A stretch of 64,000 nt of DNA. Origin: Lepidodermella squamata. Lineage: Eukaryota; Animalia; Gastrotricha. The translations under genes and the position numbers were made by a program. The notes under the pieces were generated by a model. It saw nothing but the letters and a program-made list of their open reading frames with translations. It had not been told where the DNA came from and searched no databases. Location of the stretch: positions 186,001 to 250,000 of the forward strand of contig JBLDXI010000050.1 of NCBI GenBank assembly GCA_047495785.1. Direction: 5' to 3'. Each line of letters starts with the position of its first letter. Positions within the stretch are counted from its first letter, which is position 1. Shown here piece after piece: positions 11,395-64,000 of the stretch.

Positions 11395-12907
11395 TCAGGC
11401 TTGAAATAATAACATTATCAAGAGAAACACCCAGTTTATAGATAGAACGAAAGCCGAATTCTTAGATTTCGGCGCTGATGGGTTCTGATTTTTCGGTTCG
11501 ACCCTTGATGTTTGCATGATAGCTGGCCCCTCAGTTGGGCTATCCATTCTCAGTAGATTTACCTGCCCTAATCGAGAAGCTGCCATTTGGCTGAACAGCT
11601 CAATCGCTTTCTCTTTGATAGTCTGCAGAACAGTAACAACCTTTGTCGCAATTTGTTCTTCGGTCAGTTGCGTCAAACTCCGCAGAGCCACTATGTAATC
11701 CGCAATCACACTGCCTTTCCTGAAGTTTACGATCCTAATGTTAGCTACCGAGCCATTCAGACCAAGTGCTGTCCGATTCATTAGTTCCATTAGGCCTGGC
11801 ATCATGTAGTCTGACAGCGCTTTGAATGTTCCAGAAGCTGGGTTATTCAGGTCAGGATTCCAAGGATCGGTCACGATAACCAGTTGCTGCCGTAGGGCTG
11901 CTGTACACTTTGATCTGGTAAAGGTAGGCAGGTAGCAAATCAGGAAGGAGAAGGAAAGTCCAAACATTTGGATTCACAAGGTCCACAACGAAATAATCGT
12001 TGAACCTCTGGATAACCAGCTTATTGCCATTGCTTGTATCGTATCGAACAGCTATATTGACCTTGTCCGAATTATTGACAGAAATTAGCCAGCCTGGTTT
12101 TGTCATTTTGAACATGAAACCTAACGAGTAAGACTGCCGGCCAGGTCCTAGTGCGTCGCTAGCTTCTAGGTAACTACCGCGTGACCCATTCAATCGGTAG
12201 CCGGTTCGAGTTTGATTCCCGACCGGGGTTTCAAGCCCAAGAAATCCTTGCATTTGAAAAGGGGGCACATCAGGAACTTCGGATGTTAGATTGGTCTCGT
12301 AAGTTAACGGCCAAAACGCTTTTAGTTTCGATACGCTGCTAATTTGAGGTTGGCCGCAGGTTATAGATCCACTAGGTAACCATTGCCCATTAAGGCAGCT
12401 CATGTCTGAATAGAAACCATTAGCGCAAATTGGCCGAAGTACTGTATTCGATGGTTTCCAGTTGTTATTTGGTGCAGCTGGGCCACTCCAAGTTCCCAAA
12501 GCCGAGCTAGCCAAGTTCCCAATAGCTCCATTCGCAGAACCCCCTTTGCATTGAGCCACTGATGTTCCTGCTTTGACATCAAGAGTCAAATGAATTACAT
12601 GCGGTAAATTGTGCGAATTCTTACCGAAATCGTTGCAACTTTGGACTGACATCGACCACCAGCCACCATCTAAGCATTTTATAGTTGTGGCATTCGTTGT
12701 TGACGAGCAATTTAGCAAAATCTCGGTTCCGACTGGAAAAGTTTTATTTCCATTTGTTACGAAACTATAGGAGCCATGTCGTATTGCCATGCTGTATAAG
12801 CCCGTTAAATTGGTATCAGTTGATGCGTTCCAGTTACATATCTCAGTCGCTGATGTTTCAGAGGCTATAAAAACGAATGTTAAGATGGTGAGCTTTAAAG
12901 GCTTCAT
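11395..12907 (-). pseudogene. Sushi-LamG-lectin-SEA family copy 1, internally deleted and frameshifted
   Basis: Sequence jumps from LamG WTFLL directly to the end of the lectin domain (PAYLYQIKVY), then to SEA (RQQLVIVTDPW) in another frame. SEA motif FRKGSVIADY and the hydrophobic tail are retained. Confidence 0.75.
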
Positions 12908-13340
12908 AGAAATAGTTGGTGAGACGAAATGGCGTGGCTTGAAATCAATCGAATGCTACGGCGGAGACCTGAGAGTTGCGAGACGAAACAGTTGGCTTTG
13001 TTTGTCATTCAATCATTGTTGTTTGAACTTCTCGGCTTGCTTTGAAACTAGAAACATTTCAAGGGCATCGATTTTGCGTAAGATGTGAGAAGTAATTGTT
13101 TTATTTGTATCATTAATTGTAGATGCACTGACTGTTCTCCGTTTCGTCTATCCTAGTGTTTCTTAGCCAGGAAAGACATTCAGCCAGTGGTTATTCCAAG
13201 TTCTCTGACCATTTATGGTAGACATTAACGGATAATTCATCATAAAATATTACTGTGAGATCAATTCTTTCCAAGCATGTATTTACAAAGTTTATTCTTC
13301 AATTAACCATTATTTAACCATTTTCTTAAGACAGTTAAAG

Positions 13341-16223
13341 TCAGGCTTGTGTTATCAAGCTTATACATAGTACAGTTAAATCCATGGCTAAACCAACACC
13401 GGAATTCGCAGTTGATGAAGCTTTCTTATTGTCAGTTGGCTCAACTTTCGATGGCGGGGCAGTTTTTATCGATTTAGACCCTGATGTTGGGCCATCCATT
13501 CGCAATAAGCTAACCTGGCCCAATCGAGACACTGCCATCTGGTTGAAGAGCTGTACCGACTTATCTTTGATGACTTGCAGAGCAATAGTAACTTTCGCGG
13601 CGATTTCCTCCTCCGTCAGCTGTGTCAAGCTGCGAAGCGCCACAATGTAATCAGCAATAATACTGCCCTTCCTAAAGCCGATAATTCGAACGTCAGACGC
13701 TGAGCCTTTGAATTCAACAGCAGTCCGATTCATCAATTCAATGATGCCGGGCAGCATGTAGTTTGCCAAGGCTGTGAATGTCTCAGAATTTGGGTTATTC
13801 AACTCAGGGTCCCAAGGATCAGTTATTATGACACGTTGACGCCCAGGAATCGTTATATTTTCACCTTTAATACTGAAATTCATGACCAACTCGTATCGAA
13901 AAGGCAGGGAAGGAAATGGGTCCGGAGTCGTACGCGGACCTTCTGTTGTAACCGCGCACTTTGAATTCGTTGTGCTGTTGTAGACTTTGATCTGATTGAG
14001 GTAAAATGGCAGCATAGATGGTGATAAACTGAATGGCAAAGCAGCTAAAATGCCGAATCTTATTGGTTGCTGAATGCAATTGAAGTCGTTCAAAGTATGC
14101 TGCGAAGCAATCGCAGCTTTCTCACTGCTTTCGCAAGATATCGCGATGGAATTCCCGACTTTTTCTACCGATATTACGTCCACATCACATGGCAATACGC
14201 TCGAGTTTGAAATCAAGCTTTCAGAAAGCTGGGATGGTTGAACCGAGGCGTAAACTTCCAGCCGTCTCGAGGCAATATACAGCACGATCGATAATCCGAT
14301 GAAGTTAGTGCCGTCCACATTGATCGGGGTATTTTTGTAGTCTCCAACGTCGAGATTAGCTGTAGCCTTATCGGCGACAAAGTAGAAGCTCAGGGCGCCA
14401 CCTCTTGGTTGAACTGACACTTGGAAATCGACTCGCCAATCATTCGCAGCGTTGAGTGTCTGATTTCAAGATAAATTTGATGAAATAAAAAGTTTCAGAT
14501 AAACACTGCTCACTGATGACGACCAAACAGCTCCTCTTTGACCGACGTAGGCGAGCCGGGCAGTCATTCCGCTCTCGGTTATAGCTGCTGCGCCTCTCAG
14601 GTAGTGTAAGTCTGAAATTGATTGGATATGTTGAAATTTATCAAGGTTTATAGAACAAACGAAGATTTGCAATGTTGACAGACTTTATCGGGTCGTACTG
14701 CCACGATATCTCAGGGAATGGCCGTGTTGCAGCCAATGGAGATGATATAGCTTGATGAAAAAAATTGAAGCTTAACAAAATGAAAAAGCCTAATTACTTA
14801 TTTCTAATTTTTAAGAGATAAATTAAAAAAAATGTGTAGAAATTTTTTTATTAATTATAATTTGTTAGTCAAATTTGCATTCAGCTGAATAACTTATACT
14901 TACTTTTAATGCAATGCTTGTACAATATTTCGGCCGTATTCATCTCCATGTATGCTTTATCAAATAGCATTAAACAAGCAACGCGAGCATCTGGGCTTCC
15001 CACTTCATTGGGCGATCTTGGGAACAAAAACAGGAAATTTCAAATGTCCGAGATCAACAGAATCTGAACATCTTGTTACTGGGGTTAACTTGGAAAAAAT
15101 TAACAATTAACAAAAAAAGAAACCTTCTTCCGACGTAGAAAGTCGCAGGGTAATTTCTGTTGAAGGACCACGAAGAGCCGGTGGTAAAGTTGACAGTCGT
15201 TATCGTTCCGCCAACAACGTTTGCGACGCGCTGATTGGCGTTTTCGCACGCAAGCAGCAAGAATGTCCAAGCCTCAGGATCCACAAGGTCCACAGTGAAA
15301 CTGTCGCTAGAGCCATAAATAGCCAGTTTTTTACCACTGCTTGTATCATATCGTACAGCTACGGTTACTCCGTTAGAATTTCCAGCATTGTCGATAGTAA
15401 CCAGCCAACCAGCCTTTGAAACTTTGAACATGAAACCGAGAGTGAAAGACCGCGGTCCATCGTCGAGTTTATGTAAGGCTTCTAGGTAATCACCCTTATT
15501 GCCACTTAGTCTGAAACCAGTTTGAGTAGAATTTCCACTCGGTTTCTCAACCTCCAAAGTCCCCTGCATTTGAAACGACGGCGTCGTTGGAACTAGCGAT
15601 GCAAGATTTGCTTCGTTGGTGAGAGGCCAAAACGCCTTCAACGTAGATGGGCTAGTACTCAGAGGCTGGCCACACGTAAGCGTAAGAGCTCCGCCTGGGA
15701 ACCACTTCCCATTAAGGCAGCTAAGGTCCAAGTAGAATCCATTCGCGCAAATCGGCCGTAGAACTGTATTCGATGGTTTCATATCAGTCGTAGCGGGAAA
15801 CGGGTCATTCCAGATTCCTAATGCCGAGCTGTTGAGTAGTCCTATAGCGTTATTCGCATCTCCCCCTTTGCATGACGCAGCTGTTGTCCCTGCTATCCAT
15901 TGAATAGAATGGCGAGAGAACTATCAAAAAATAAACTAACCAAAGCTGTTACAGGTTTCAACAGGCATAGACCAAACGCCGTCACTCAGGCATTTGATGG
16001 TAATCGAGTTCTTTGTTGAGGTGCAGTTCAGCATCACCTCATTGCCAACTGAGAAAGTTCGATTTCTTGATGTATCAAAGGTGTCAAAATCAAATCGTAT
16101 TGCCATGCTATAGAATCCATTTAGATTACTATCGCTTGACGCGTTCCATTTACATAACTCGATCGGGGCTGTTTTGGAGGCAAGCGAAACGATTGTTAAC
16201 AAAAACAGTACAAGGCGATTCAT
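13341..16223 (-). CDS. Sushi-LamG-L-lectin-mucin-SEA GPI-type surface protein, copy 2 (six exons, apparently intact)
   Basis: Exons ~15941-16223, 15124-15892, 14904-15016, ~14661-14750, ~14515-14611 and 13341-~14459 splice in frame at GT-AG sites. Signal peptide, CCP-like C..C.xGxW..C modules, RLAYVGQRGAVW...DWRVDF lectin-like strand pattern, FRKGSIIADY and hydrophobic C-terminus. Confidence 0.78.
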
Positions 16224-18417: not shown

Positions 18418-18643
18418 GTATAATCAGTGCAAAGTCTGGTACTAGAATGAATAGCAAAGTGAACACGGCAATAATACGGATTCTTGAAGTCATGAAACGG
18501 CCGAAGCGAATTTTCCCAGCATACCATGGCTTTCTTGCCAATTCGCAAGCTAACAGCATGTAAACCGTCAACAAAATACCAGCTCCGTATTTCAGCGAAA
18601 TCAGCAGAACGATATAGACGAGTTCAGAGGTTTGCGGTATCAT
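18076..18643. repeat. 139-bp inverted repeat (18076-18214 / 18505-18643) with 290-bp spacer
   Basis: Direct reverse-complement match of the M2-M3 coding segment. Confidence 0.92.
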
Positions 18644-29290: not shown

Positions 29291-30214
29291 TAACACATTA
29301 CCGTTAACGTATAATCGTTGAACCTCTGGATAACCAGCTTATTGCCATTGCTTGTATCGTATCGAACAGCTACGTTGACTTTGTCAGAATTATTTACCGA
29401 AACTAGCCAGCCTGGTTTTGTCATTTTGAACATGAAACCAATGGAGTAAGACTGCCGCCCAGGTCCGAGGGCATCGCTAGCTTCTAGGTAACTACCGCGT
29501 GACCCATTCAATCTGTAACCGGTTCGAGTTTGATTCCCATTCGGGGTTTCAAGCCCAAGAAACCCTTGCATTTGAAAAGGGGGCACATCAGGAACTTCGG
29601 ATGTTAGATTTGTCTCGTAAGTTAACGGCCAAAACGCTTTTAGTTTCGATACGCTGCTAATTTGAGGTTGGCCGCAGGTTAGAGATCCACTAGGTAACCA
29701 TTGCCCATTAAGGCAGCTCATGTCTGAATAGAAACCATTAGCGCAAATTGGCCGAAGTACTGTATTCAATGGTTTCCAGTTGTTATTTGGTGCAGCTGGG
29801 CCACTCCAAGTTCCCAAAGCTGAACTAACCATGTTCCCAATAGCGCCATTCGCAGAACCCCCTTTGCATTGAGCCACTGATGTTCCTGCTTTAACATCAA
29901 GAGTCAAATGAATTACATGCGGTAAATTTTGCGAATTCTTACCAAAATCGTTGCAACTTTGAACTGACATCGACCACCAGCCACCATCTAAGCATTTTAT
30001 AGTTGTTGCGTTCATGGTTGAAGAGCAATTTAACAAAAGCTCGGTTCCGACTGGAAAAGTTCGATTTCCAGTTGTTGAAACTATTGGAGCTATATCGTAT
30101 TGCCATGCTGTAAAATCCCCTTAAATTGGGGTCAGTTGATGCGTTCCAGTTACACATCTCAGTTGCTGCTGCTTTGGAGGCTATAAAAACGGCTGTTAAG
30201 ATGATTAGCTTCAT
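29290..30214 (-). pseudogene. Sushi-LamG-lectin-SEA family copy 3; only the 5' part, frameshifted in exon 1 and truncated at the LINE
   Basis: Near-identical to 11995-12907; similarity ends at ~29310 with the tandem duplication ACATTACCGTTAAC. Confidence 0.85.
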
Positions 30215-34325: not shown

Positions 34326-37230
34326 TCAGGTTTGTGTGATTAAGTTTATACACAGTATAACTAAATCCACGGCTAAACCAATACTGGAATTCGCAGTTGC
34401 TGGAGCTTTCTTCAAGTCAGTTGCCTCAACTTTCGATGGCGGGACAGTTTGTCTCGATTTAGGCCCCGATGTTGGGCCATCCATTCGCAATAAGCTAACC
34501 TGGCCCAATCGAGAAACTGCCATCTGATTGAAAAGCTGTATCGAATTGTCTTTGATGACTTGCAGAGCAATAGTAACTTTCGCGGCGATTTCCTCCTCCG
34601 TCAGCTGTGTCAAGCTGCGAAGCGCCACAATGTAATCAGCAATAATACTGCCCTTCCTAAAGCCGATAATTCGAACGTCAGACGCTGAGCCTTTGAATTC
34701 AACTGCAGTCCGATTCATCAATTCAATGATGCCGGGCAGCATGTAATTTGCCAAAGCTGTGAATGTCTCAGAATTTGCGTTATTCAGCTCAGTGTCCCAA
34801 GGATCAGTTATAATGACACGCTGACGCCCAGGAATCGTTATATTTTCACCTTTAATACTGAAATTCATGACCAACTCGTATCGAAAAGGCAGGGAAGGAA
34901 ATGGGTCCGGAGTCGTACGCGGACCTTCTGTTGTAACCGCGCACTTTGAATTCGTTGTGCTGTTGTAGACTTTGATCTGATTGAGGTAAAATGGCAGCAT
35001 AGATGGCGATAAACTGAATGGCAAAGCAGCTAAAATGCCGAATCTTATCGGATGCTGAATGCAATTGAAGTCGTTCAAAGTATGCTGCGAAGCAATCGCA
35101 GCTTTCCCACTGCTTTCGCAAGATATCGCGATGGAATTCCCGACTTTTTTACCGATATTACGTCCACATCACATGGCAATACGCTCGAGTTTTAAATCAA
35201 GCTTTCAGAAAGCTGGGATGGTTGAACCGAGGCGTAAACTTCCAGCCGTCTCGAGGCAATATACAGCACGATCGATAATCCGATGAAGTTAGTGCCGTCA
35301 ACATTGATCGGGGTATTTTTGTAGTCTCCAACGTCGAGATTAGCTGTAGCCTTATCGGCAACAAAGTAGAAGCTCAGAGCACCACCTTTTGGTTGAACTG
35401 ACACTTGGAAATCGACTCGCCAATCATTCGCAGCGTTAAGTGTCTGATTTAAAGATTAAATTGATCAAAAATAAGTTTCAGAGGATCAGAGCTCACTGTT
35501 GAAGACCAAACAGCTCCTCTCTGACCGACGTAAGCGAGCCGGGAAGTCATTCCGTTCTCGGTTATAGCTGCTGCGCCTCTCAGGTATTGCAAGTCTGAAA
35601 TTGATCGGATATTTTGAAATTTATCAAGGTTTCTAGAACAAACGAAGATTTGCAATGTTGACAGACTTTGTCGGATCGTATTGCCACGATATCTCAGGAA
35701 ATTTTTGCGTTGTAGCTAATGGAAATGAGATAGCTTGATGGGAAAACAATACAATGTAACGTCAATTTTTAAATATTTTTTTCAAATATTTTTTTTATAT
35801 TATTGTCAACATAAGCTCTGGAATTAAATGGATAAGGAATCTTCAGAGTTTCATAAGAAGAAGCTTTAATAAATTTGTGAAATTTTCAATACAACGAAGT
35901 AATGTCTTACTTCTCATGCAATGCTTGTACAATATTTCGGCTGTATCCATCTCCTTGTATGCGTTATCGAAAAGCATTAAACAAGCCACTCGAGCGTCTG
36001 GACTGCCGAGTTCATTAGGCGATCTTGACAACAAACACAAAAAATTTCAAATGCCCGAGATCAACAGAATCTGAACATCTTGTTACTGGGATTAACTTGG
36101 AAAAAATTAACAATTAACAAAAAAAGAAACCTTCTTCCGACGTAGAAAGTCGCAGGGTAATTCCTGTTGAAGGACCACGAAGAGCCGGTGGTAAAGTTGA
36201 CAGTCGTTATCGTTCCGCCAACAACGTTTGCGACGCGCTGATTGGCGTTTTCGCACGCAAGCAGCAAGAATGTCCAAGTCTCAGGATCCACAAGGTCCAC
36301 AGTGAAACTGTCGCTGGAGCCATAAATAGCCAGTTTTTTACCACTGCTTGTATCATATCGTACAGCTACGGTTACTCCGTTAGAATTTCCAGCATTGTCG
36401 ATAGTAACCAGCCAACCAGCCTTTGAAACTTTGAACATGAAACCGAGAGTGAAAGACCGCGGTCCATCGTCGAGTTTATGTAAGGCTTCTAGGTAATCAC
36501 CCTTATTGCCACTTAGTCTGAAACCAGTTTGAGTAGAATTTCCACTCGGTTTCTCAACCTCCAAAGTCCCCTGCATTTGAAACGACGGCGTCGTTGGAAC
36601 TAGCGATGCCAGATTTGTTTCGTTGGTGAGCGGCCAAAATGCCCTCAACGTAGATGGGCTAGTACTCAGAGGCTGGCCGCACGTAAGTGCAAGAGCTCCA
36701 CCTGGGAACCATTTCCCATTAAGGCAGCTAAGGTCAAAGAAGAATCCATTCGCGCAAATCGGCCGTAGAACTGTATTCGATGGTTTCAAGTCAGACGTAG
36801 CGGGAAACGGGCCATTCCAGATTCCTAATGCCGAGCTGTTGAGTAATCCTATAGCGTTATTCGCATCTCCCCGTTTGCATGACGCCGCTGTTGTCCCTGC
36901 TTTACATTGCATGGAATGACGTGAGAACAATCAAAAAATAAACCAACCAAAGCTATTGCAGGTTTCAACAGGCATCGACCAAACGCCATCACTCAGGCAT
37001 TTGATGGTAATCGAGTTCTTTGTTGAAGTGCAGTTCAGCATCAGCTCATTGCCAACTGAGAAAGTTCGATTTCTTGATGTATCAAATGTGTCGAAATCAA
37101 ATCGTACAGCCATGCTATAGAATCCATTTAGATTACTATCGCTTGACGCGTTCCATTTACATAACTCGATCGGGGCTGTTTTGGAGGCAAGCGAAACAAT
37201 TGTTAACAAAAACAGTACAAGGCGATTCAT
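34326..37230 (-). pseudogene. Sushi-LamG-lectin-SEA family copy 4 (duplicate of copy 2), pseudogene
   Basis: Highly similar to 13341-16223, but has TCA>TAA at 35192-35194 and a 1-nt deletion near 35148 in the last exon. Confidence 0.85.
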
Positions 37231-43849: not shown

Positions 43850-46581
43850 TTACCATAATGAAATAACAAGAACAACATTCGTTAAGAAGAAGCTTGCAAC
43901 TATCGCATTTGCATTTGATTTTTTAGCGTTTTTTGTGTCTGCTCCAGTTCCAGATACTTCCGTATCGATTTTACCACCTGGCGATGCGGTAGCTGCTACT
44001 TCAGTTGGGGAGGCATTCATTTTCAGCAAATTCACTTGCCCAAGTCTGTTTGAGCTTAGTCCAGTAAGAAGCTCGACAGCCTTTCTCTTCAATACATCCA
44101 CTGCCTCTGAAATTTTAGCCGCGATTTGATCCTCAGTCAATTGCGTCAGACTCCTCAGGGCCACGATATAGTCTGCTATGATGCTGCCCTTTCTGAACTT
44201 CAGAATTTGGACGCTCAGGATTGTTCCGTTCGTCGATGAAATGACGAGTTTTTCAATTGCTGGTGTCACGTACTGGGCAAGGGCATTGAAGGTGCCCGAA
44301 TTGGGGTCATCCAAAGCTTTATCCCATGGTTCTGACGAGACAACAAGATTCGACCCTGGAATTGTCAAATTCTCCCCAATTATGCTCATATTCATCAGTA
44401 ACTGATAGGAATAAGTCGCAGCTACGGTCGGCACTTGAGTTGAAGTCGTAGTCGTTGGGCCGTTTGTAGTTGAGGAGTTCGAATTCGAATAGAACTTGAC
44501 CTGATACAGGTAAGGGGCTCTTCGATACCCTGGGATGTCTCTAAGAAAATTCGCTCCAACGCCGTAGCGTAGATTCCCGCTTATGTCATGGAAATTCGGG
44601 ATATCTTTCGAGAAAACCGGATATACAGTTCCGTTGGCTTGACAGTAGATACGAAATGAAGTTCCTGCTTTCTCAATTGTCAGAATCTCCGCAGCATTCG
44701 GAAAGGCACATCCTCTAACATTTTCCGCTGTTATTTGAGTAGTCGAAAAGTTGCTAGGTGTTGATGCGGCTGATAGGGTGAAACTTCCGAGATTCATTCG
44801 CCAAATGACAACAAGGCCAGATATTTGGGACCAGTTTACATTGTACGCGTTCTCAGTTTTATCGACCGCTTGGTCAACATTGACACTAATTTGGTCGGCT
44901 AGCATGTAGAAATCAAGATCGCCCGTATGGGAATCTGCTGTCACGTGATACTCGATGTGCCAGTCGATTTTAGGCGAAAAAGTCTGGAAATGAGAGATGG
45001 AAATTCGAAAGCAGCTTATTTTTGAACTTGTTTTCCTGTTTCGATTTCCCCCAATTTTTATTTATTTACCTGTGAACTCCAAACACTGCCGTATTTCCCG
45101 AATGTAGCAAGCCGTATTGTCATACCATTTTCCGTTATCACTGCGGAACCTCTCACGTACTGTGTATCTAACATTAAAAACGAAACCTAAAATAGTGTGA
45201 TTTTAATTAAAGAACTTACAGAAATTTGCGATGTTTATTGAAAGGGATTCATCGTACGTCCATGGAACATTCGTGGAAGCTTTGACAATCGATTGAATGG
45301 CTGGAAAAAAATTAGGTAAAATGAGCTTTTCAATAAACTGCTTACTTCTCAAGCAGTGCTCATAGCAAACCGAAACATGATCTTGTCGATAGAATGCCGT
45401 ATTGAAATATTTGAGACAGCCGAGTTTGCCTTCAAAACCTGTGTCATTGCTTTGAAAAATACTTATAGCTGGGAATGTGAACTGGATTAGAAGTCCTTAC
45501 CTTTTCCCGACGATAAGGCTTAACTGCTGGTCGTTGGGTAAGGCCCAATTTTGTTTTGTTTTAATAGTGACCAAACCAGCTCCACCTCCTACCATTATGA
45601 CGTTGATACTCGTGTTGTTGATACAGGAGACGAGGACAAAAGTCCACTGATGTGGGACGTTGATTTTTACATTGGCTTGAAATGCCTCTGAACCACGCAA
45701 TAAGGTGATTTTCTGCTGTGTCGCGTCGTAGGACATCGTGATGTCAGGACCATTAGGTGTGTCGATCGTCCAAACCTGGCCAGATAAATCAGGCTTCATG
45801 AAAATACCAAGACTCCATTGCTGGCTGCCCTGTCCGGGAAGATTCCTTGCCACGACTTGCGAGTCATTTCGGAAGTAGTAGGTATTCAGGTTTTCCAGAG
45901 TATCGACTACAACCTCGAGGCTACTGATTCCGCTGTTCAGCGGCCTGAGATTGGTAGTGCTGGACATCGGCCAGAATGCCAGTAGATTCGAAGGCCCAGC
46001 ACCACCGCTACGGTCTCTGCAGCTGAAACTGGTCAAATCCGATATAAATTTGCCATTTAGGCAGGTTGTTTGTCGATAGACCCCTGAGTTGCACATCACC
46101 CTGATCACAGTATAGTTAGGATAGTCGATATCAGGTAACTTGGCTTGACCAGGCTGCCACGATACTTCTGAATCGTTACTCACGAAGAATTGGTCACCAG
46201 GAATCGTCCAACCAGTGATTCTACAGCTTTTCAGCTGGGATTCCGGATTTTCTAAAAATTTCAATTTTATGTCACAATTAATTCGTAAATCAAAACCAGC
46301 TCACGAAGATCAGAACAGCTGGGGACTGGATTTGACCAGTAGCCATTATCGAGGCATTTGATAGATGTCATATTCGTGGGGAAGGAGCAATTCAGCTCCA
46401 TTGTCACCCCGACCTCGAACCGCGTGGACTGTTTCGATGGGTGAACTTTTTGCACTGCGAGAAAGTCGAAGCCGTATTTTACCGTCATCGCATCCTTTGT
46501 TCCGCTCCAAGGGCATTGTTCTATTGCAAAAATGCTGGAGAAACACATTAAAAAATGCAACCCAACCCTTAGGACAATCAT
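43850..46581 (-). CDS. Sushi-LamG-L-lectin-mucin-SEA GPI-type surface protein, copy 5 (apparently intact)
   Basis: Same six-exon layout; VGK-SNDTGFEGKLGCLKYF LamG end; RLATFGKYGSVW lectin strand; FRKGSIIADY; hydrophobic tail. Confidence 0.78.
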
Positions 46582-50228: not shown

Positions 50229-53200
50229 TTATGTGTGAAAGTCACTCACGGCAATCATCAAAACAACTAATAATAGGAGATTAAGATCGAGATTGTTCGC
50301 TTTTGATTTCTTCTGATTTTCTGATGCTTTAACAGCAGCTCGTATATCTTTATCGATTCTGCCGGCTGAAGATACAGTGGATGTCGACACGAGCGGAAAG
50401 GGGTCCATTTTCACTAAATTGACGTTTTCGAGTCGACTCAGACTAATTCCAGATAGTAACTCGCCAACTTTGACCTTCAATATATTCACAAGTACCGCAA
50501 CTTTGTCCGCAATTTGCTCTTCAGTCAGCTGCGTCAAACTTCTCAAGGCCACAATATAGTCAGCTACAATGCTGCCTTTTCTGAATTTCACGATTTCAAC
50601 GCTTTGAATTGACCCATTTATCGTCTGAGCCGTCGAAGTCATTATGTTCTCGATTGCCGGTAACATGAACTGGGCTAGTGCTTTGAATGTCTCTGAATTG
50701 GGGTCATCCAACGCTTTATCCCATGGTTCTGTCGAGACAACAAGATTCGAGCCTGCAATAGTCAAATTCTCCCCAGTAATACTGATATTCATCAGTAACT
50801 GATGAAAGTAATGCATTTCTCCTAATGGTAAGCTCTCGGGAGAAATTTGCGGGTTTTTAGTAGTATTAGGGCTCTCTGCTTTAGTAGAGGATCTATCACT
50901 TATAGAAGTAGGAGTATCACTTGTAGAAGATGCAGAAGCCTTGCTGGTTGCAGCCAAATTATTTTCACTCGTTGTTTTTGGAGTGGATGTGTCCAGGGTT
51001 GTAATTACAGCAGTTTTAGGTGGAGAGGTATCGATTAACGAAGTTGACGTTGTAGAAGTAGATGTAGATGAAAATGTGGATGTAGCTGTAGGTGGAGTGG
51101 CAAAGGCTGACGAAGTCGGAGTTGAAATTGAAGTTGGAGTTGAGGCTGAAGATGTAGTTGTAGATGAAGTTGTAGATGTAGATTTGGACGTAGTTTTAGG
51201 TGGAGAGGTATAGGTTGACGAAGTCGAAGTTGAAATTGAAGTTGGAGTTGTAGATTTAGATGTAGATTTAGATGTGGATGTAGTTGTAGGTGTAGAAGTT
51301 GACGAAGTCGGAGTTGAAATTGAAGTTGAAGTTGTAGATTTAGATGTAGATTTGGATGTGGATGTAGACGTGGATGCAGATGTCGATGTGGAGCTGGTTG
51401 TACTTGAATTCCTTACATAAGAATAGAATTTCACTTGATATAGGTATGCAATGCTTTGCGACGGTGCAGTGTCCATCAAATAGTAAGCCCCGACACCATG
51501 ACGCAGATCTTCACCAATGTCGTGAAAATTCGGAATGTCCTTCTGGAATACCAGATTTGCAGTTCCATTGCTTTGGCAATAAACTCGGAACGCGGTCCCA
51601 ATCTTTTCGATGGTCAACATCTCCGCAGCTCTTGGATAGGCGCATCCAGGTATAGCCTCAGCCGCGATTTGTGTATTCGAAAACTTGTCCGGGGTAGATG
51701 TAGCTGATAGCGTGAAGCTGCCAAGCTTCAAGCGCCATTGGACAACTAAGCCGGAGATTTTCGACCAGTTGACGTTGTACATATTATCAGCAGTGTCGGT
51801 TTGGAAGAGGTAGATACTAGTTTGATAGGCTAGAATGTAGAAATCAAGTCGGCCCATATCAGCAGTTGATGCAAGATAGAACTGAATATTCCAATCATCT
51901 CGGGGGCTGAAAGTCTGTTAATGATTAAAAATGAAAAAGGGTGTATTGGAAGGGTAAATAATAGTAATACATTGATTAAAAAATCTTTGCACCTCATTAA
52001 AAAATCATATCATTTCTGATGTTCTGCTAGCCGCGGCGTCCTATAGTACGTCTCATGGAGGACAGTGGTTGGGGTTTTAGTTGGTGGTAGATTTTAGCGT
52101 TAGGGTTAGGATTCGGCTCAGGACTAGGGTTGAGGGTTGAGGTTAGAGAGGTGACCTAACCCTAACCCGAGGGGTGTGGCTTCAACAGCTGTTGATGGAG
52201 CCGAGTCGAGTGTGAAATCTGGGTTTTGCGTGCAAAATACCGGACCGTTATTCGACCTTCTTTCATGAAACCTGGATACGATGATAATTGCCAATCAATA
52301 TGAGCTTACTTGTGAGTTCCAAGCACTGCCATATTGTCCGGTTGAAGTAAGTCGTATTGACATGCCATTCTCTGCTATTGAGGCTGGCCCTCTCAGGAAT
52401 TGTGTATCTATCATCATTGAAAATAGTTCATTAAAAAAAATTCCTCAATCAAAGAGTCAATACCGAAGTTGACGAGGTGTATCGACAGCGAGTCATTGTA
52501 TGCCCACGGAAGGCCTGGGTTCGCACTGTTGATAGATGATGGATATCTGACAGCTGGAGTGATAGAAATGAATAGAAAATGCAAGTCCTAATTCGAATTT
52601 GAATTTGTGAGTACATGCGACGGGCATTCAACACATATAACTTACATGAATTTCTGAACATTTTTCAGAAATTGTTGGATTTTTTCAAGAAACTAATTGA
52701 AATTATGTGTACTTATTCGATCGCTTTAATCTCTTTTTTGCTATCGGTTATGGTGGTATGTTGCATCGGCCCCGCAGAAAGAAATTGATATCTTAAAAAA
52801 TGCTGCACTTACTAGCGATGCATTGTTGATAGAGAACCAGTGCGAAGTCGACAGTAGAATAGCTTTCATTGAACAATTTTATGCACGCAATATCACCAGC
52901 GAAGCCAGCGGACCCAGCATCGGTCCTGTTAAAATCGAATAATATTGAAATTGCAACAGATAAACTGATATTAGAGTTTACTTTTTCCCGATAACGAGGT
53001 CAAGCCGCACATTAGGTAGAGCCCAGTTTTCGGTCGTTTTGACGCTAAGCGAGCCTACTCCACCTCCAGCCATAGCGACATTCACGCTTGTACTACTGAC
53101 ACAGGAAACCAGGACCAGGGTCCATTGCTTAGGGTCTGTTATGTTGAGATTTACAGACACCCTCTCAGGCCCTCGCCACAGAACAATTTGCTTCAATTTC

Positions 53201-54059
53201 GAATCATAAGCTATTGCCGTGTCATTCTTGGCTGTACCATTAATCGTCCAAATCAACCCGGGCGAGCTGAATCGGATCAAGATACTTAAGCTCCATTGTT
53301 GGCTTCCCTTACCGGGAATTCTTAATGCTACCATTCGAGAGTCATTTTTGAACGAATATGCCCCTTTTCCGACAACCGTAGTATTGACCACGACATCTAG
53401 ACTGTTCACTAAACTAGTTAGCGGTTCAAGGTAAGTATCACTAGTCAGAGGCCAGTAAGCTTTCAGATTCGATTGCCCGCTTCCACCAGCCCGTTTGTTG
53501 CAATCGAATTCGGTCAAATCAGGTATAAATTCCCCATTCAGGCAGGTTGTTTGCCGATAGGCCCCGGAGTTGCACATTGCCCGGATCACAGTGTAGTTGG
53601 GATAGTCGATATTTGGTAACTTGGCTTTGCCAGGCTGCCATGTTGTTTCAGAATCATTACTCACAAAAACCAGACTACCAGGAATTGTAGCCACATTGAT
53701 GTTACAACCTTTTATCTTGGTTCCAGGATATTCTAGGATTTAGGGAATTAATACGATTTTATGATGAGAGTTTTGAGCTCACGAAAGTCAGCACACCGAT
53801 CGATTCGTGTCGACCAGAATCCATTATCCAGGCATCTAATGGATGTAACATTCGATGAACAACTTAGCTGTGCGATGATCCCATATTTGAACCAAGCTGA
53901 TGTATTTGCCGGCAATGCAATGGATTTCGTGAGAAAGTTGTAGCCGTAGTTGACTGTCATTATGGTTGCATCGATGGTTCCGTTCCACCGACATTGTTCG
54001 AGAGCTTGAATTCTAGCTGAGAAGCAGAATATTATCAAAGCCGTTGCTGCACGAAACAT
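50229..54059 (-). CDS. Sushi-LamG-L-lectin-mucin-SEA surface protein, copy 7, long Ser/Thr stalk (apparently intact)
   Basis: The exons checked splice in frame; RLTSTGQYGSAW...DWNIQF; ~200-aa S/T-rich stalk; FRKGSIVADY. Confidence 0.8.
52065..52170 (+). repeat. Degenerate TTAGGG-like tract in an intron
   Basis: TTAGGGTTAGG/GAGGGTTGAGG runs followed by CCTAACCCTAACCC. Confidence 0.6.
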
Positions 54060-57987: not shown

Positions 57988-58441
57988 AAACTTAAAGATT
58001 CTCATAGGTTTGGGAAACGCTGAGTAATTGTGTTTGGGCTTTTAACGCTGTTGACGACGGTTAAAAGTGAAGCCAAGTGAGGCTAAGATGTGAATACGTA
58101 AAATTGCCTCGGACCAAACAGGTTAGAAATCTTTCTACAGGTGTAACACGCAGGATCGTTAGTCGGTAGTTTGTAGAAGCAGAAAAATCCAAGGCAACTG
58201 GACATTAATATTTAAAAATACCGTCGCTAGAGTTTTGCAGGCTTGACAGCCAAAATGTTAAATAATTGCTAAGGAAAAGTCGTGTTTAATGGGTTAAAGT
58301 TTAAGTTAAACATGTTACGGTGTTGTTTTGAAAGCCAATTATGGCACGCGCTGGGTCTGAACTCGTGATTCGAAAACTTATTTGTATTAACCGACTTAAA
58401 ATCTCGCCAATAAAAATTTATTTGCTTCGCAAAACACATCA

Positions 58442-60106
58442 ATGAGGAGCTTTATTTTAACACTTTGCGTTATTCCCTTCGCGATTATCATCCAGGCATC
58501 TGGTCAAAACTTCAAGCGATGCTTCCAAGTGACCAACAACGCATTCACTACGTGCCGCGATAACAGCCCTACCTGTGATCCTATCAGCGAGCATCAGGTA
58601 TTTTGTTATAGGGATTCATGCCTAACTCACAGCTTTCCGTAGAGAGGCTTCCGAGATCCGAAGACTTTGAGTGATGGCAATTTTATAAATATTATTCGGA
58701 ATTTGGAATTTGAAACTCTCCGTTCCAAGAATCTTCTACAGTGCTCCCTCGATAACTGCACCCCCGCTATCAACACACCCTCTTTAATTGCAACTGTTTA
58801 TTGGACTCACAGCTGTCGCGTGGCACCATCTGTTTTAAGCAAAAAACGCAAATCCCTCGATAACTGTTTCCCTCGATAATTTCACGGGTCTGGACCCCGA
58901 CCCCGTGCAGATATCGAGGGAGCACTGTATTTAGATGGAATTTAATTTTAGTTTAATTTGAAATTTGAAATTTAACCAGTGTGCGACTTTCTGGAGAGGA
59001 TGGGGGATCATCCCACCCAGCTCGGCCGGGCCAGACGACAAAATAAGAATTTAGCCCACTGTTTCGTCAAATTTGAGAGGTTTATGAGGGCGTTTAAGTG
59101 GAAAATCTTCACAATTTTCCTTCTTCGCTCGTTTTTTAGTTGAAATTTAGTTTTGGAAAATACAGCAAAACAATTTTCTATCCCCGGCAGCTCCGGGATC
59201 CAAGATCGCACCCTGAATTCAATGCTGAATTTTAATTTTCATTGATATTTTATTCATTTAATTTAATTGATAAATAATTTATTTTTCAATACAGTGGGGT
59301 CCTTTGTTCCCAGATTTGGCAACTTGCCGATCAGGCGTAAGAAATCTTAAATTTGGGTCTCGTCACTGTAAATTTCTATCCATGTCGAGAACAGAATGCT
59401 AAGATGTGCTACAAACACGGCGCCCTAACTACACGATGCAATCCTGGCCTTGGAAGCTGTAAATTAACTGGCGAGCCAGCTGCTGCCAGAGAAATCGAGG
59501 TACGTTTCCACCTCAATCTCACATGTTATATTCATTTAATTCGGCTTTTTTCAGCTGAATTGGTTAAGGAACACCTCGCTGAAGGACAGCTTGGCCGCTT
59601 GCAATAATGCGAGATCGAAATTTACCGTAAATTCATTAGCTGAAATGTTGATGCTATTAAGGTTTTACTTGAATTTTCAGAATCAAGCGTTTAAACGATG
59701 CACAGACAGCGGAGTCGTGAAAACATGTGTCCCAACCAACTTCACTTGTCCGGAGAACTGGGTTTGAAGCAGTTAATCCTTATCGAGCTGATTGTGAGTT
59801 TTTTCTTATTCACAGCTCGAAGGCGGCAACACATACGGCAATTTTGGCCTCTGCATCTCACGTGGGACTTCACGTGAGTTTTTCAAATATTAAATTTTTA
59901 AATGAATTCGCTCAAAATGCACTGAAACAGTTCAAGTTGCTGCCAGCGAGAAGCCGCATGTCAGATGTTTCGATGCGTCTACTGGGAGCTTCATCGATTG
60001 TCGCCTCGAGACTACTGGCTGTCTAGCTGGGACTGAAACTCGAGAATTTTCGCCCGCGACGTTATCCAACAGGGCAAACTGCCTAACTGGGGTAAACTCT
60101 AATTAA
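58442..60106 (+). CDS. Seven-exon secreted protein (~229 aa) with four 4-Cys repeats; exons 58442-58597, 59295-59336, 59395-59499, 59555-59626, 59681-59761, 59816-59873, 59931-60106
   Basis: All six GT-AG introns keep an open frame, giving a signal peptide plus four C-x8/10-C-x6-C-x13/28-C modules. The 3' end is uncertain. Confidence 0.72.
58739..58927. mobile_element. Tc1/pogo-type MITE (intronic)
   Basis: TA-CAGTGCTCCCTCGATA...TATCGAGGGAGCACTG-TA. Confidence 0.85.
58977..59215. mobile_element. hAT-like MITE (intronic)
   Basis: CAGTGTGCGA...TCGCACCCTG termini; degenerate 8-bp TSD AATTTAAC/AATTCAAT. Confidence 0.65.
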
Positions 60107-60147
60107 TGATTAAATTTCGGGTATAGTGCTTATCAGTGTTTCGAGTG

Positions 60148-60325
60148 TTTCAGTTGATTCACAACCACCGAAAATTTGGCCGCAATTTGATCTTCTGTCA
60201 GCTGGGCCTCCTCAGGGCCACAATGTAATCGGCGATAATACTGCCTTTTCTGAATTTCACGATTTTAACGCTGAGAATCGTTCCGTTCAGCGTTTGGGCC
60301 GTTGAAATCATACGATTTTCGATTT
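60148..60325 (-). pseudogene. Isolated SEA-domain fragment of the surface-protein family
   Basis: Matches ~47125-47300 (VKIVKFRKGSIIADYIVALR) with a small deletion. Confidence 0.75.
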
Positions 60326-62094
60326 TGAAAAGAACCAATTATAGGTATTTGTGTCAACCAAAAATTTCGAACTTTGAAAGCAAAATAACAAAATTGCAAC
60401 TTCGAATGGACAACAATTTTACGAAGGAAATACACAAGTCACTCATAAACACTTTACGGCAATCATCAAAACAACTATTAATAAGAAATTGACATTGAAA
60501 TTGTTAGCTTTTGATTTCGCTTTCGGCCGACTATCTGATAATTTAGCAGTGGCGCGTATTTCTTTGTCTATTCTCCCGGCTGAAGGTACAGTTGGGGTCA
60601 CTTCGGCAGGAGAAGCGTTCATTTTGATTAAATCGACATTGCCGAGTCTACTCAGACTTATTCCAGAAAGCAACTCGCCAGCCTTTTTCTTCAGTTGATT
60701 CACAACAATCAAAACTTTAGCCGCAATTTGTTCCTCTGTCAGCTGGGTCAAACTCCTCAGAGCCACAATATAGTCGGCTATGATGCTGCCTTTTCTGAAT
60801 TTAACGATCTCAATGCTTTGGATTGACCCATTCAACATCTGAGCCGTCGAAGCCATTATAATGTTCTCGATTGCCGGTAACATGAACTGACTTAGGGCTT
60901 TGAAGGTAATTGAATTTGAGTCATCCAACGCTTTATCCCATGGTTCTGTCGAGACAACAAGATTCGAGTCTGCAATAGTAATATTCTCCCCAGTTATACT
61001 GATATTCATCAGTAACTGATATGCATAAGGCATAGGTCCTGATGGTAGGTTCTTGGTTGAAGCTTGTAGGCTAGTAGTCGTAGGGCTCTCTGTTTTTAAA
61101 GATGATATGTCTTCTGTAGAAGTAGAAGTATCACTTGTTGGGGATGCAGATGCCTTGCTGGTTGTAGCTGAATCAGTTTCACTCGTTATTTTGAGTGTAG
61201 TGTCCATGGTAGTAGTTGTAGGTGGAGTAGTATAGAATAAAGAAGTTGAAGTTGCAGATGTAGATTTAGATGTAGCTGTAGCTGTAATAGCTGTAGATGG
61301 AGTTGTAGCTGTGGTTGTAGATGGAGATGTAGATTTAGATGTTGATGTAGACGTGGATGCAGGTGTGGATGTGGACGTAGATGTAGATGTAGATGTAGAT
61401 GTGGAGCTGGTTGTCCTCGAATCGCTTTCATAGGAATAGAATTTCACCTGATATAAGTATGCAATGCTTTGCGACGGAACAGTGTCCATCAAATAGTATG
61501 CCCCGATACCATGACGTAGATTTTCACCAATGGCGTGAAAATTCGGAATATCTTTCTGGAATACCAGATTTGCAGTTCCATTGCTTTGGCAATAAACTCG
61601 GAACGAGGTTCCAATCTTTTCGATAGTCAGCATCTCCGCAGATCTTGGATAGGCGCATTCAGGGATAGCCTCAGTATTAGAAATGAGTATTAGAAAACTT
61701 GTCCGGGGAGGATGCGGCTGATAAAGTGAAACTGCCAAGCTTCAAGCGCCATTGGACAACCAAGCCGGAGATTTGTGACCAGTTGACATTATACATATTA
61801 TCAGCAGTGTCGGTTTGGAAGAGGTAGATACTAGTTTGATAGGCTAGAATGTAAAAATCAAGTCGGCCCATTTCAGCAGTTGATGCAAGATAGAACTGAA
61901 TATTCCAATCAATTCTGGGGCTGAACAGAGTTCATGATTTAAAATAAACACACAGCTTTTAAAAATTGGAGAGTAAATAATAAATTGATAATTGTAGACT
62001 AATAGGTACTTTAGGACTGATGGAGTAATAGGACTTTATAAGGTATATAGTAAGGACTTTATATAGTAAGGACTTTATTCGGGTAAGGGAGAGG

Positions 62095-62295
62095 CTTATG
62101 GTCAGGTTAGGACTATGGTTAGGCACGGCTACGGCTTTGAGGTTTTAAAGACTAAGAAAGTGACTAGGGCTATGCATTAGGGTTTCAGTTGAGGTTAGGC
62201 TTAGGGTTCGGCTTAGGGTTCGGCTAAGGACTAGGGTTTAGGGTTAAGGTTAGGGTTAGGGTTAGGGCGAGGGGTGTGGGGTGTGGGGTGTGTTG
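62095..62295 (+). repeat. TTAGGG-like tract in an intron (orthologous position to 52065-52170)
   Basis: GGTTAGGGTTAGGGTTAGGG plus variants TTCGGC/TTAGGC. Confidence 0.75.
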
Positions 62296-63733
62296 ATGGA
62301 GCCTAATCTGACATCTAGGATATGAGTGCAAAATACCGGACCGAAATTCGACCTTCTTTCACGCAACCTGGTTACGATGATAATTGCCAATTTATTAGCT
62401 TACTTGTGCATTCCAAACACTGCCATATTGCCAGATTGAAGCAAGTCGTATTGACATACCATTTTCCGCTATCGAGGCCGGCCCTCTCATGAATTGTGTA
62501 TCTATCATCAATGAAGACAGTTTATTTTCGAAAAATCTTCCTCAATCAAAAAGAAAATACCGCAGTTGATGATGTTTATCGACAGCGATGCATTGTATGC
62601 CCACGGAAGGCCTGAGTTCACGCTATTGATAGATGACGGGTATCCAATAGCTGGAGAGATAAATAAATAGAAAATTTTAAATAAACAACTTGAATTATCT
62701 CTTATTAATTTTCGAGTTTGAGAGTAAGTTACATAATTTTTAGGTCCCGCAGAAAGATATCGCACGAAAAAGTATACACTTACTTGCGATACATTGTTGA
62801 TAGAGAACCAATGCGAAGTCGTAAGTAATATAGCTTTCATTGAAAAATTTGATGCACGCAATATCACCAGCAAAACCAGCGGGTCCAACATCAGTGCTAC
62901 ATAAATCGAATGATAAAAATTTCAACGGATAAACTGATATATATTTGCTTACCTTTTCCCGATTACGAGGTCAAGCCGCACGTTAGGTAGAGCCCAGTTT
63001 TCAGTCGTTTTGACGCTAAGCGAGCCAGCTCCGCCTCCAGCCATAGCGAGATTAACACTAGTGCTACTAACACAGGAAAACAGGACCAGGGTCCATTTTT
63101 GAGGGTCTGTTATGTTGAGATTTACAGACAACCGTTCCGACCCTCGCAACAGAACTATTTGCTGCAATTTCGAATCATAAGCTATCGTCGTGCCATTCTT
63201 GTTTGTCGCATCGATTGTCCAAATCAACCCAGGCGAGCTGAATCGGATCAAGACACCTAAGCTCCATTGTTGGCTGCCCTTGCCGGGAATTCGCGATGCT
63301 ACCAATCGAGAGTCATTTTTGAAAGAATAAGCGCCCTTCCCGACAATCGAAGCATTGACTACGACATCTAGAGTGTTCCCTCCACCAGTTAACGGTTCAA
63401 GGTATGTATCACTTGTCAGAGGCCAGTAAGCTCTGAGATTCGATTGCCCACTTCCACCAGCCCGTTTGTTGCAATCGAATTCGGTCAAATCTGGTATGAA
63501 CTTCCCATTCAAGCAGGTTGCTTGTCTATAGGCCCCCGAGTTACACATCGCTCTGATCACAGTATAGTTTGGATAGTCGATGTTAGGTAACTTGGCTTTG
63601 CCAGGCTGCCATGTTGTTTCAGAATCGTTACTGACGAAAAATTGACTACCAGAAATCGTATTCACATTGATGTTACAGCTGTTCACCTTGGTTCCAGGAT
63701 ATTCTAGAATTGAGGGAAATAAGACGAGTTTAT

Positions 63734-63878
63734 CAGTGTGCGAAGTAGGATCCAGGAGCTGAGATGTTTTCTATAGCAAGTTTCTAGCACCCAGCCGAAG
63801 TAATTAAATGGTCGCCCCTGTGGTTTTTGAGCCTTCCTCTGTTTGGGGTCCTAGAGCTTAGGTGTACTTCGCACCCTG
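63734..63878. mobile_element. hAT-like MITE in intron 1 of copy 8
   Basis: CAGTGTGCGAAGTA...TACTTCGCACCCTG; absent from the paralogous intron at ~53740-53780. Confidence 0.85.
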
Positions 63879-64000
63879 TTTATCATGATAGTTTTGAACT
63901 CACGAAAATCAGCGCATCGATCGATCTGCCTGGACCAATATCCATTATCTAGGCATTTAATTGATGTAACGTTGGATGAACAATTCAGCTGCATGATGAT

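What the first reader, a model, noticed from the sequence alone, without database searches (positions are those of the whole stretch)
11395..64000. Expanded family of sushi-LamG-L-lectin-mucin-SEA GPI-type surface proteins
Seen: eight tandem copies plus a fragment, all on the minus strand, with a shared six-exon structure. The ORF track splits each gene into pieces. Spliced products read signal peptide, two CCP-like modules, a LamG/pentraxin-like domain, a legume/ERGIC-53-type lectin-like domain (RLTSTGQYGSAW..DW.(V/I).F), an S/T stalk, SEA and a hydrophobic C-terminus with no cytoplasmic tail. Established: SEA GSVVV-type motifs autoproteolyse in mucins such as MUC1, and known animal L-type lectins are mostly intracellular cargo receptors. 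Inference: this is a diversifying, sheddable, glycan-binding surface family for microbe, symbiont or self recognition. I do not recognise this architecture from any described family.
Basis: partly seen in the sequence, partly recalled or inferred. Interest (0 to 1): 0.85.

Follow-up and report, generated by a model that had tools for sequence, protein, structure and literature searches.

The report
Gastrotrich sushi-lectin-fold surface mucin family
A microscopic freshwater animal (very probably the gastrotrich Lepidodermella squamata) has about 30-50 related genes for probably lipid-anchored, self-cleaving surface proteins with two sushi modules and two lectin-shaped domains on a stalk; the domain order looks undescribed, but half of the copies in this window are broken and sugar binding is unproven.

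Summary
The family is real, but the count is overstated. There are eight minus-strand copies plus a SEA fragment, in three groups separated by other genes. Four (B, E, F, G) are intact six-exon genes of 814-1004 aa with the same intron phases. D and H keep six exons but carry stops, frameshifts or a lost acceptor. A and C lack exons through deletion or insertion.

Domain tests: module 1 is CCP (profile hits only CCP proteins); module 2 is its diverged duplicate. Both lectin-like domains model as ConA-type sandwiches (Z 16.2 and 13.7). SEA passes Pfam, with a near-invariant GS(I/V)(I/V)(A/S) cleavage motif. The tails look like GPI signals.

Not supported: the L-lectin calcium/sugar loop is missing; dN/dS is below 1 everywhere (0.15-0.26 in the window); a true mucin stalk occurs only in G and H. 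The genome holds about 50 matches; no homologue of the head was found elsewhere. Splicing is not shown by RNA.

Verdict: a new, lineage-specific variant of SEA-type tethered mucins, most likely a releasable surface coat or decoy. The scan noted this family before on adjoining and other DNA of this genome.

The parts
11395..12907 (-). Copy A, broken: exon 1 (12907-12625) and most of exon 2, joined by one deletion to about 20 codons of the lectin end, then by a second deletion to SEA and tail in another frame; first stop at aa 333
   Evidence: DNA contigs of run X1 cover the stretch without joints (same sample as the assembly)
13341..16223 (-). Copy B, intact, 823 aa; exons 16223-15941, 15892-15124, 15016-14904, 14750-14661, 14611-14514, 14459-13341; short stalk
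   Evidence: SEA Pfam 29.5 bits, cut-off 26.4
29311..30214 (-). Copy C, broken: paralogue of A (88-91% DNA), frameshift in exon 1 near 30070, cut inside exon 2 by an inserted element
34326..37230 (-). Copy D, six exons but broken: stop codon at 35194 and 1-nt deletion near 35148; segmental duplicate of B (93% over 4.06 kb)
43850..46581 (-). Copy E, intact, 814 aa; exons 46581-46305, 46251-45501, 45449-45346, 45300-45220, 45167-45070, 44983-43850
   Evidence: SEA 33 bits
46908..49734 (-). Copy F, intact, 817 aa; exons 49734-49458, 49403-48677, 48627-48512, 48461-48372, 48312-48215, 48053-46908
   Evidence: SEA 28.8 bits
50229..54059 (-). Copy G, intact, 1004 aa; exons 54059-53783, 53732-52982, 52925-52813, 52553-52464, 52407-52310, 51914-50229; about 200-aa S/T stalk
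53793..53993 (-). G module 1: CCP/sushi (4 Cys, Trp before the last Cys)
53500..53706 (-). G module 2: diverged duplicate of module 1 (CCP-like)
   Evidence: prob 90%; direct CCP evidence weak
52813..53472 (-). G domain 3: LamG/pentraxin-like ConA sandwich (exon 2 C-part plus exon 3)
   Evidence: model of paralogue L013
51423..52490 (-). G domain 4: legume/L-type-lectin-like ConA sandwich (end of exon 4, exon 5, start of exon 6); canonical Ca2+ loop absent
   Evidence: model of paralogue L045; column counts
50820..51422 (-). G Ser/Thr-rich stalk
   Evidence: sequence
50412..50819 (-). G SEA domain; predicted Gly/Ser cleavage bond between codons 50576-50574 and 50573-50571 (motif GSIVA)
   Evidence: (paralogues); PMC6954182, PMC2958558
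50229..50330 (-). G C-terminal GPI-signal-like segment: small residues, spacer, about 15 hydrophobic residues, stop
   Evidence: no GPI predictor available
60148..60338 (-). SEA-domain fragment with a frameshift (74% identical to G)
60443..64000 (-). Copy H, broken, runs off the window (exon 1 continues beyond 64000): exon-6 acceptor lost, +1 frameshift near 61685; 138-aa stalk

Best explanation
A lineage-specific family of tail-less, probably GPI-anchored, SEA-type surface proteins built as signal - CCP - CCP-like - LamG-like sandwich - L-lectin-fold sandwich - S/T stalk of 25-200 aa - SEA - GPI signal. SHOWN: gene structure, CCP identity of module 1, the two ConA-type folds (predicted models), SEA, motif conservation, purifying selection, birth-and-death turnover. 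INFERRED: the protein enters the ER, exchanges its C-terminal signal for GPI, and cuts itself at the Gly-Ser bond of SEA; the halves stay together until force or a phospholipase releases the head. MOST LIKELY ROLE (inferred): a releasable coat or decoy on an exposed epithelium (gut, pharynx or body surface) that holds a four-module binding head at different heights and catches microbial or food-particle ligands through a non-canonical, calcium-independent surface. It cannot signal alone. Confidence: architecture about 0.9; GPI anchoring about 0.8; SEA self-cleavage about 0.75; binding/decoy role about 0.4.
For: Four stop-free six-exon models with the same phases. The same six blocks in the same order occur in 27 of 30 loci examined; in two more exon 6 is not found within the fetched stretch and one is a fragment. 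Paralogue L013 lacks intron 1 and joins modules 1 and 2 in one frame. The module-1 profile hits 51 PDB sequences, all CCP-containing proteins (best E 2e-23 summed over repeats, best single domain 0.009); hhalign to this genome's own sushi domains gives prob 87.9%; the Atlas points to the Sushi clan. Domain 3: Z 16.2, rmsd 2.8 over 172 residues to AbnA domain 4; pentraxins and neurexin LNS at Z 11.6-12.0. Domain 4: Z 13.7, rmsd 2.9 over 156 residues to the E. histolytica legume-lectin-like domain; ERGIC-53 Z 12.6, VIP36 Z 11.9. SEA is over the Pfam cut-off in 4 copies. GSIIA or GSIIS occurs in 28 SEA-bearing frames, with GSIVA, GSVIS and GSTIS once each; known cleaved motifs are GSVVV, GSVIV and GSVIA (PMC2958558) and GSIVA (PMC6954182). 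The head diverges faster than SEA (B vs G 27-30% vs 52%). Cell-surface mucins act as releasable decoys (abstract of PMC6491460).
Against: No RNA holder was found, so neither splicing nor expression is shown. No GPI predictor could be run. Domain 4 lacks the Ca2+/sugar loop: D/N/E/H occur in 3 or fewer of 28 rows at columns 61-65 and 67 (7 of 28 at column 66), and the loop-A Asp is present in 17 of 28 paralogues but only in copy E here. Mutating Asp121 or Asn156 abolishes binding in ERGIC-53 (PMC3912170). Galectins and GH-associated modules score within 1 Z of the L-lectins, so the fold does not fix the family. There is no dN/dS above 1 in any head domain, which is less than a pathogen arms race would predict.
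Confidence: 0.45

Rival explanations
1. Structural or adhesive components of the apical matrix (cuticle or epicuticle, glycocalyx, egg coat, adhesive-gland secretion). The sandwiches bind proteins or matrix, as LamG and thrombospondin C-terminal domains do, and the paralogues differ by tissue or stage rather than by ligand.
For: Purifying selection in all domains; missing lectin site; thrombospondin C-terminal domains appear in the fold list (Z 10.4-10.8) and are extracellular L-lectin-like matrix domains (PMC6526912).
Against: Fast turnover with half the local copies dead, and heads that diverge to 25-30% while SEA stays near-invariant at the cleavage motif, fit specificity variation better than a structural role.
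Confidence: 0.3
2. Ligand-capturing co-receptors or decoys for a chemosensory system: the same kind of head is reported on Cys-loop channels in this genome, and the GPI forms would hand ligands to, or compete with, those channels.
For: Earlier notes s1-429968 and s1-393957 report such channel fusions (AI notes, not checked here). Cys-loop channel genes or fragments lie between the copies, and one was co-duplicated with B/D.
Against: The channel genes in this window are on their own, partly on the other strand, and show no head in my self-comparison. Being neighbours in a gene-dense, duplication-prone region proves no partnership.
Confidence: 0.13
3. The C-terminus is not a GPI signal: the proteins are simply secreted, or are held by a tail-less membrane helix; or part of the copy number and the lesions are artefacts of whole-genome amplification and uncollapsed haplotypes.
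For: The assembly very probably comes from MDA-amplified DNA (PMC11660948). C30/C60 and C42/C50 carry near-identical copy sets. A few paralogue tails are weak or cut.
Against: Copies in the window differ by 7-70% with dN/dS of 0.15-0.26, which is real evolution. The published assembly has QV 58 and no detected chimeric contig. Nearly all complete tails have a 15-residue hydrophobic stretch at the very end.
Confidence: 0.12

Closest known systems
SEA-type membrane mucins (MUC1, MUC3/12/17) and other Gly-Ser-cleaved SEA proteins (enteropeptidase GSVIV, matriptase GSVIA, GPR110/GPR116 GSVVV/GSIVA)
   Same: S/T stalk above a membrane-proximal SEA with the Gly-Ser cleavage motif (PMC2958558, PMC6954182)
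   Different: No transmembrane helix plus cytoplasmic tail; a GPI-like end; a folded four-module head on top; a short stalk in most copies; a multigene family of 30-50
Animal L-type lectins ERGIC-53 and VIP36; legume lectins; E. histolytica legume-lectin-like domain
   Same: Fold of domain 4 (Z 11.9-13.7 over 152-156 residues); N-terminal strand motif resembles theirs (own knowledge)
   Different: No sequence match (Pfam, PDB profile); Ca2+/sugar loop absent; no coiled coil, TM or ER/Golgi tail. The genome has separate true PF03388 genes on C21 and C55
Sushi-thrombospondins and thrombospondins (PMC6526912)
   Same: Secreted animal proteins that combine N-terminal sushi modules with two or three ConA-like/L-lectin-like domains
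   Different: Here there are no EGF or type-3 repeats and no DDD motif was noticed; sushi-TSP has no SEA, stalk or GPI tail and is known only from sponges and cnidarians
ADGRG6/GPR126 ectodomain (CUB-PTX-SEA-HormR-GAIN; PMC6954182)
   Same: Small disulfide module(s), then a pentraxin-type sandwich, then a cleavable SEA
   Different: CCP instead of CUB, a second sandwich, no GAIN or 7TM
Schistosoma japonicum SEA-domain family (PMC3886910)
   Same: Lineage-specific expanded SEA family in the sister phylum; surface (tegument, gut) location; glycan (GAG) binding
   Different: Small SEA-only proteins with no CCP or ConA heads; no sequence link was tested

Membership tests
CCP/sushi module | Four Cys (1-3, 2-4) with a conserved Trp before the last Cys, 60-70 aa (module 1) | tested here: met
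   Three Cys and the Trp invariant, the fourth Cys nearly so, in 27 rows; bonding pattern inferred
CCP/sushi module | Profile similarity to CCP domains (module 1) | tested here: met
   51 of 51 PDB hits are CCP-containing proteins; hhalign prob 87.9%; single sequences stay under the Pfam cut-off (E 1.6)
CCP/sushi module | Same for module 2 | tested here: inconclusive
   Homologous to module 1 (prob 90%); top PDB hit factor H at E 0.11; no match to own sushi profile; fold not searched alone
LamG/pentraxin-like domain | ConA-like jelly-roll of about 180-200 aa | tested here: met
   Model pLDDT 80-96 over residues 230-350; Z 16.2 AbnA D4, 12.0 ADGRG4 PTX, 11.9 neurexin
LamG/pentraxin-like domain | Sequence membership of Pfam LamG or Pentaxin families | tested here: not met
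L-type (legume-like) lectin | Legume-lectin beta-sandwich | tested here: met
   Z 13.7 (5zbt), 12.6 (ERGIC-53), 11.9 (VIP36); galectins tie within 1 Z but align fewer residues
L-type (legume-like) lectin | Ca2+ loop carrying the sugar-binding Asn (ERGIC-53 Asn156) | tested here: not met
   Columns 61-67 of A2 are R/R/S/K/T/x/G with almost no D or N. Register set by motif and strand order using an ERGIC-53 motif from memory; no residue-level structural alignment was available
L-type (legume-like) lectin | Loop-A Asp (ERGIC-53 Asp121) and loop-D Gly-Gly-Leu | tested here: inconclusive
   Asp at or one residue off this place in 17 of 28 paralogues; in the window only E has it; no conserved Gly pair after the G-x-x-A strand
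L-type (legume-like) lectin | Demonstrated carbohydrate binding | not testable with these tools
   needs a glycan array
SEA-type membrane mucin | SEA domain | tested here: met
   PF01390 over the cut-off in A, B, E, F; not reported for the whole G exon, whose SEA is 69-77% identical to E and F
SEA-type membrane mucin | Gly-Ser autoproteolysis motif in the beta2-beta3 loop | tested here: met
   FRKGS-I/V motif near-invariant; cleavage itself not tested
SEA-type membrane mucin | Long PTS region | tested here: inconclusive
   138-200 aa in G and H, 25-40 aa in B, D, E, F; 28-163 aa at 30-68% S+T among other loci
SEA-type membrane mucin | Transmembrane helix with a signalling cytoplasmic tail | tested here: not met
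   Hydrophobic stretch ends 0-6 residues before the stop
GPI-anchored protein | N-terminal signal plus omega site, spacer and terminal hydrophobic stretch, no other TM | tested here: inconclusive
   Pattern present by inspection and hydropathy; no predictor or experiment
Diversifying recognition families under positive selection (e.g. FREPs) | dN/dS above 1 in the binding domain | tested here: not met
   0 of 106 domain-wise pairs above 1; medians 0.21-0.45, maximum 0.73. Pairwise averages cannot see a few selected sites

The most novel reading that the evidence does not exclude
The family is a gastrotrich-specific, sheddable recognition repertoire in which an L-lectin-fold domain has moved from the secretory pathway to the cell surface with a new calcium-independent binding site, each paralogue has its own specificity, and the same head also feeds Cys-loop channels as a ligand-capturing co-receptor.
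Probability: 0.12. Interest if true: 0.75.

Novelty: new variant of a known kind. Interest (0 to 1): 0.42.

Why it matters
Almost nothing is known about the surface or defence proteins of gastrotrichs, the sister group of flatworms. This family gives a concrete, testable candidate for how a bacteria-feeding micro-animal coats and renews its exposed surfaces, and shows the mucin design (stalk, self-cleaving SEA, release) coupled to a folded binding head and a lipid anchor instead of a signalling tail. If the heads bind glycans without the canonical L-lectin site, that would be a new binding mode on an old fold. Against high interest: the parts and the lectin-head-on-a-stalk design are familiar, this genome holds many comparable shuffled expansions, and function, expression and selection for diversity are not shown.

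Tried and rejected
Homologue searches outside the genome found nothing. Word-index searches: lectin part, exon-2 profile, SEA part. Full HMMER scan of 1.84 billion representatives with the lectin profile: one hit, P0001, a bacterial CARDB-repeat/dockerin protein matched through four weak repeats; rejected as spurious. These blanks are limited by length windows and by the absence of most gastrotrich proteins from the libraries. PDB sequence profiles for the two sandwiches: nothing. Pfam on all members: nothing but SEA. Atlas searches for domain 4 gave only generic bacterial ConA-like modules. Domains 3 and 4 are not detectably duplicates of each other. Botulinum/tetanus HCN hits in the fold lists reflect the shared LamG-like fold at 8-15% identity; there is no toxin domain, so a toxin reading was rejected. 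COX1 search for species identity: none in the assembly; 18S loci were found but could not be compared with a named collection. Alignments A3, A4 and A6 were discarded for folding because fragments misaligned.
Full report
SOURCE. The window is G000:C50:186001-250000 of a 121.2-Mb, 151-contig animal assembly, with GC near 43%. The only run that holds the DNA is from 2024, and its study also has a 101-Mb run of another organism. This fits the MDA-HiFi genome of the gastrotrich Lepidodermella squamata (122.8 Mb, 157 contigs, GC 43.3%, QV 58, published with a 102-Mb C. elegans control; PMC11660948). The identification is an inference from these figures, not from a marker comparison.

OBSERVATION. 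Self-comparison finds eight related loci (A-H) and a SEA fragment, all on the minus strand. Exon models built from coordinates give stop-free proteins for B (823 aa), E (814), F (817) and G (1004), each with five GT-AG introns in phases 1,2,1,1,0. B is only 30-34% identical to E, F and G, which are 51-58% identical to each other, so the shared phases are not chance. The other four are broken. D has a stop at 35194 and a 1-nt deletion. H has lost the exon-6 acceptor and has a +1 frameshift. A has two internal deletions and stops at aa 333. C has an exon-1 frameshift and is cut by an insertion. DNA contigs of the source run cover A and B evenly with no joints, but they come from the same sample. 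The copies lie in three groups (A-B, C and D, E-F-G and H) with other genes between; B and D sit in a 4-5 kb segmental duplication that also carries a Cys-loop channel fragment.

FAMILY. In the genome, exon 2 has 53 matches and the lectin part of exon 6 has 49, on contigs C50, C30, C60, C42 and C85. Some sets look like haplotype duplicates, and 32 of the fetched exon-2 sequences remain at 90% identity, so I put the family at about 30-50 genes. Of 30 loci examined, 27 show all six blocks in order. Paralogue L013 has lost intron 1 and joins modules 1 and 2 in one frame, which is natural support for that junction. Trees of exon 2 and of the lectin part give largely the same subfamilies: E-F-G-H form one clade, B groups with copies on C30/C60. 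No RNA evidence was available.

HOW DOMAINS WERE TESTED. Searches ran exon by exon. For folding I used two natural open frames of paralogues: L013 (modules 1-2, domain 3 and exon 3, with about 17 intron-derived residues) and L045 (exon 5, 33 intron-derived residues, exon 6). Both models are poor in the parts with a shallow alignment.

DOMAINS. Module 1 has the CCP cysteine and tryptophan pattern. Its profile hits 51 PDB sequences, all CCP proteins such as CR1, CD55 and factor H, matches this genome's own sushi domains at prob 87.9%, and points to the Sushi clan in the Atlas. Module 2 is homologous to module 1 (prob 90%) but only weakly CCP-like directly. Domain 3 is a ConA-type sandwich: Z 16.2 to AbnA domain 4, 12.0 to the ADGRG4 pentraxin-like domain, 11.9 to neurexin LNS. 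Its ends resemble LamG_3 motifs (own knowledge), but no Pfam model recognises it. Domain 4 is also a ConA-type sandwich, best matched by a legume-lectin-like domain (Z 13.7, 156 residues), with ERGIC-53 at 12.6 and galectins tied within 1 Z over fewer residues. SEA passes the Pfam cut-off. The motif is GSIIA or GSIIS in 28 frames, with GSIVA (copy G), GSVIS and GSTIS once each; known self-cleaved motifs are GSVVV, GSVIV, GSVIA (PMC2958558) and GSIVA (PMC6954182). Complete C-termini nearly all end in small residues, a spacer and about 15 hydrophobic residues with 0-6 residues after them, the pattern of a GPI signal (established knowledge; not run through a predictor).

IS IT A LECTIN? ERGIC-53 binds mannose through Asp121, Asn156 and Gly251-Leu253 beside a Ca2+ site, and loss of Asp121 or Asn156 abolishes binding (PMC3912170). 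In 28 family members the strand after the invariant Gly ends in R-R-x-K-x-G or similar, with almost no Asp or Asn, where L-lectins carry the Ca2+ loop. An Asp near loop A is present in 17 of 28 but only in copy E here, and loop D has no conserved glycines. The register rests on motif and strand order and on an ERGIC-53 motif recalled from memory. So the domain has the fold of an L-lectin but fails a defining feature; any glycan binding would be non-canonical. Extracellular L-lectin-like domains without that site are known from thrombospondins, and sushi-TSPs already pair sushi with ConA-like domains (PMC6526912).

IS IT DIVERSIFYING? Whole-gene dN/dS is 0.24 (B-D), 0.26 (G-H) and 0.15-0.23 (E, F, G). 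Family-wide, none of 106 domain-wise pairs with dS of 0.03-1 exceeds 1; medians are 0.45 (CCP1), 0.21 (CCP2), 0.43 (domain 3) and 0.26 (domain 4). Heads drift further than SEA (27-30% against 52% for B-G), and half the local copies are dead. This is birth-and-death evolution under purifying selection. A few positively selected sites are not excluded.

MECHANISM. Shown: structure, folds as models, SEA, motif, selection. Inferred: ER entry, GPI attachment, SEA self-cleavage with the halves held together until force or a phospholipase frees the head, as for MUC1 and other cleaved SEA proteins (PMC6954182). With no tail the protein cannot signal alone. I rate a releasable binding coat or decoy on an exposed epithelium at 0.45, a structural or adhesive apical-matrix role at 0.3, a co-receptor role for Cys-loop channels at 0.13, and a non-GPI or partly artefactual reading at 0.12.

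COMPARISON AND NOVELTY. It works most like SEA-type tethered mucins but is not one (no TM or tail, short stalk in most copies). It is not an L-type lectin by site, and not a thrombospondin or adhesion GPCR. No homologue of the head was found outside this genome, and no paper with this architecture was found (open-access library only). The scan has noted the same family on adjoining DNA (s1-394201) and related head-stalk-SEA-GPI arrays elsewhere in this genome; those are AI notes and not independent support. Verdict: real, apparently undescribed domain order, a new variant of a known kind; interest 0.42.

Noticed in passing
window 349-1572 and 2788-4084 (-): Two duplicated rhodopsin-family GPCR genes (80% DNA identity); the second is intact at 389 aa (PF00001), the first is split across frames.
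   Followed up: partly
window 5091-6286 (-); 17584-18654, 40262-41230, 42404-43208 (+): Cys-loop ion-channel genes or fragments (PF02931); the plus-strand ones were co-duplicated with copies B/D.
   Followed up: partly
window 7370-9688 (+): Intronless 772-aa membrane protein with an ANF-receptor ligand-binding domain (PF01094) and a C-terminal hydrophobic stretch.
   Followed up: partly
window 9905-11313 (-): DXD glycosyltransferase gene (PF04488) immediately downstream of copy A.
   Followed up: partly
window 22144-23553 (+): AIG1-type GTPase with a weak LRAT-like match N-terminal to it; already noted as s1-404975.
   Followed up: partly
window 28767-29300 (-): 176-aa frame that reads like the C-terminal end of a non-LTR retroelement protein and cuts copy C; no Pfam hit, assignment from memory.
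   Followed up: partly
window 31289-31606 (-) and 58400-58639 (+): Two small frames with signal-like starts and cysteine-rich bodies; the first has no Pfam hit.
   Followed up: no
window 55452-57372 (+): MULE-type transposon remnant (FLYWCH and MULE domains) between copies G and H.
   Followed up: partly
window 11451-11691: A read contig with 11 differences over 241 nt lies on the SEA part of copy A, but the assembly has no such close second copy: an unassembled allele, or the missing 3' half of copy C.
   Followed up: partly
window 52070-52180 and 62080-62300: Intron 5 of G and H holds a short degenerate CCCTAA-like repeat stretch.
   Followed up: no
L013:1186-2388 (G000:C30, about 353.7-354.9 kb): Paralogue with precise-looking loss of intron 1, joining the two CCP-like modules in one exon.
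   Followed up: partly
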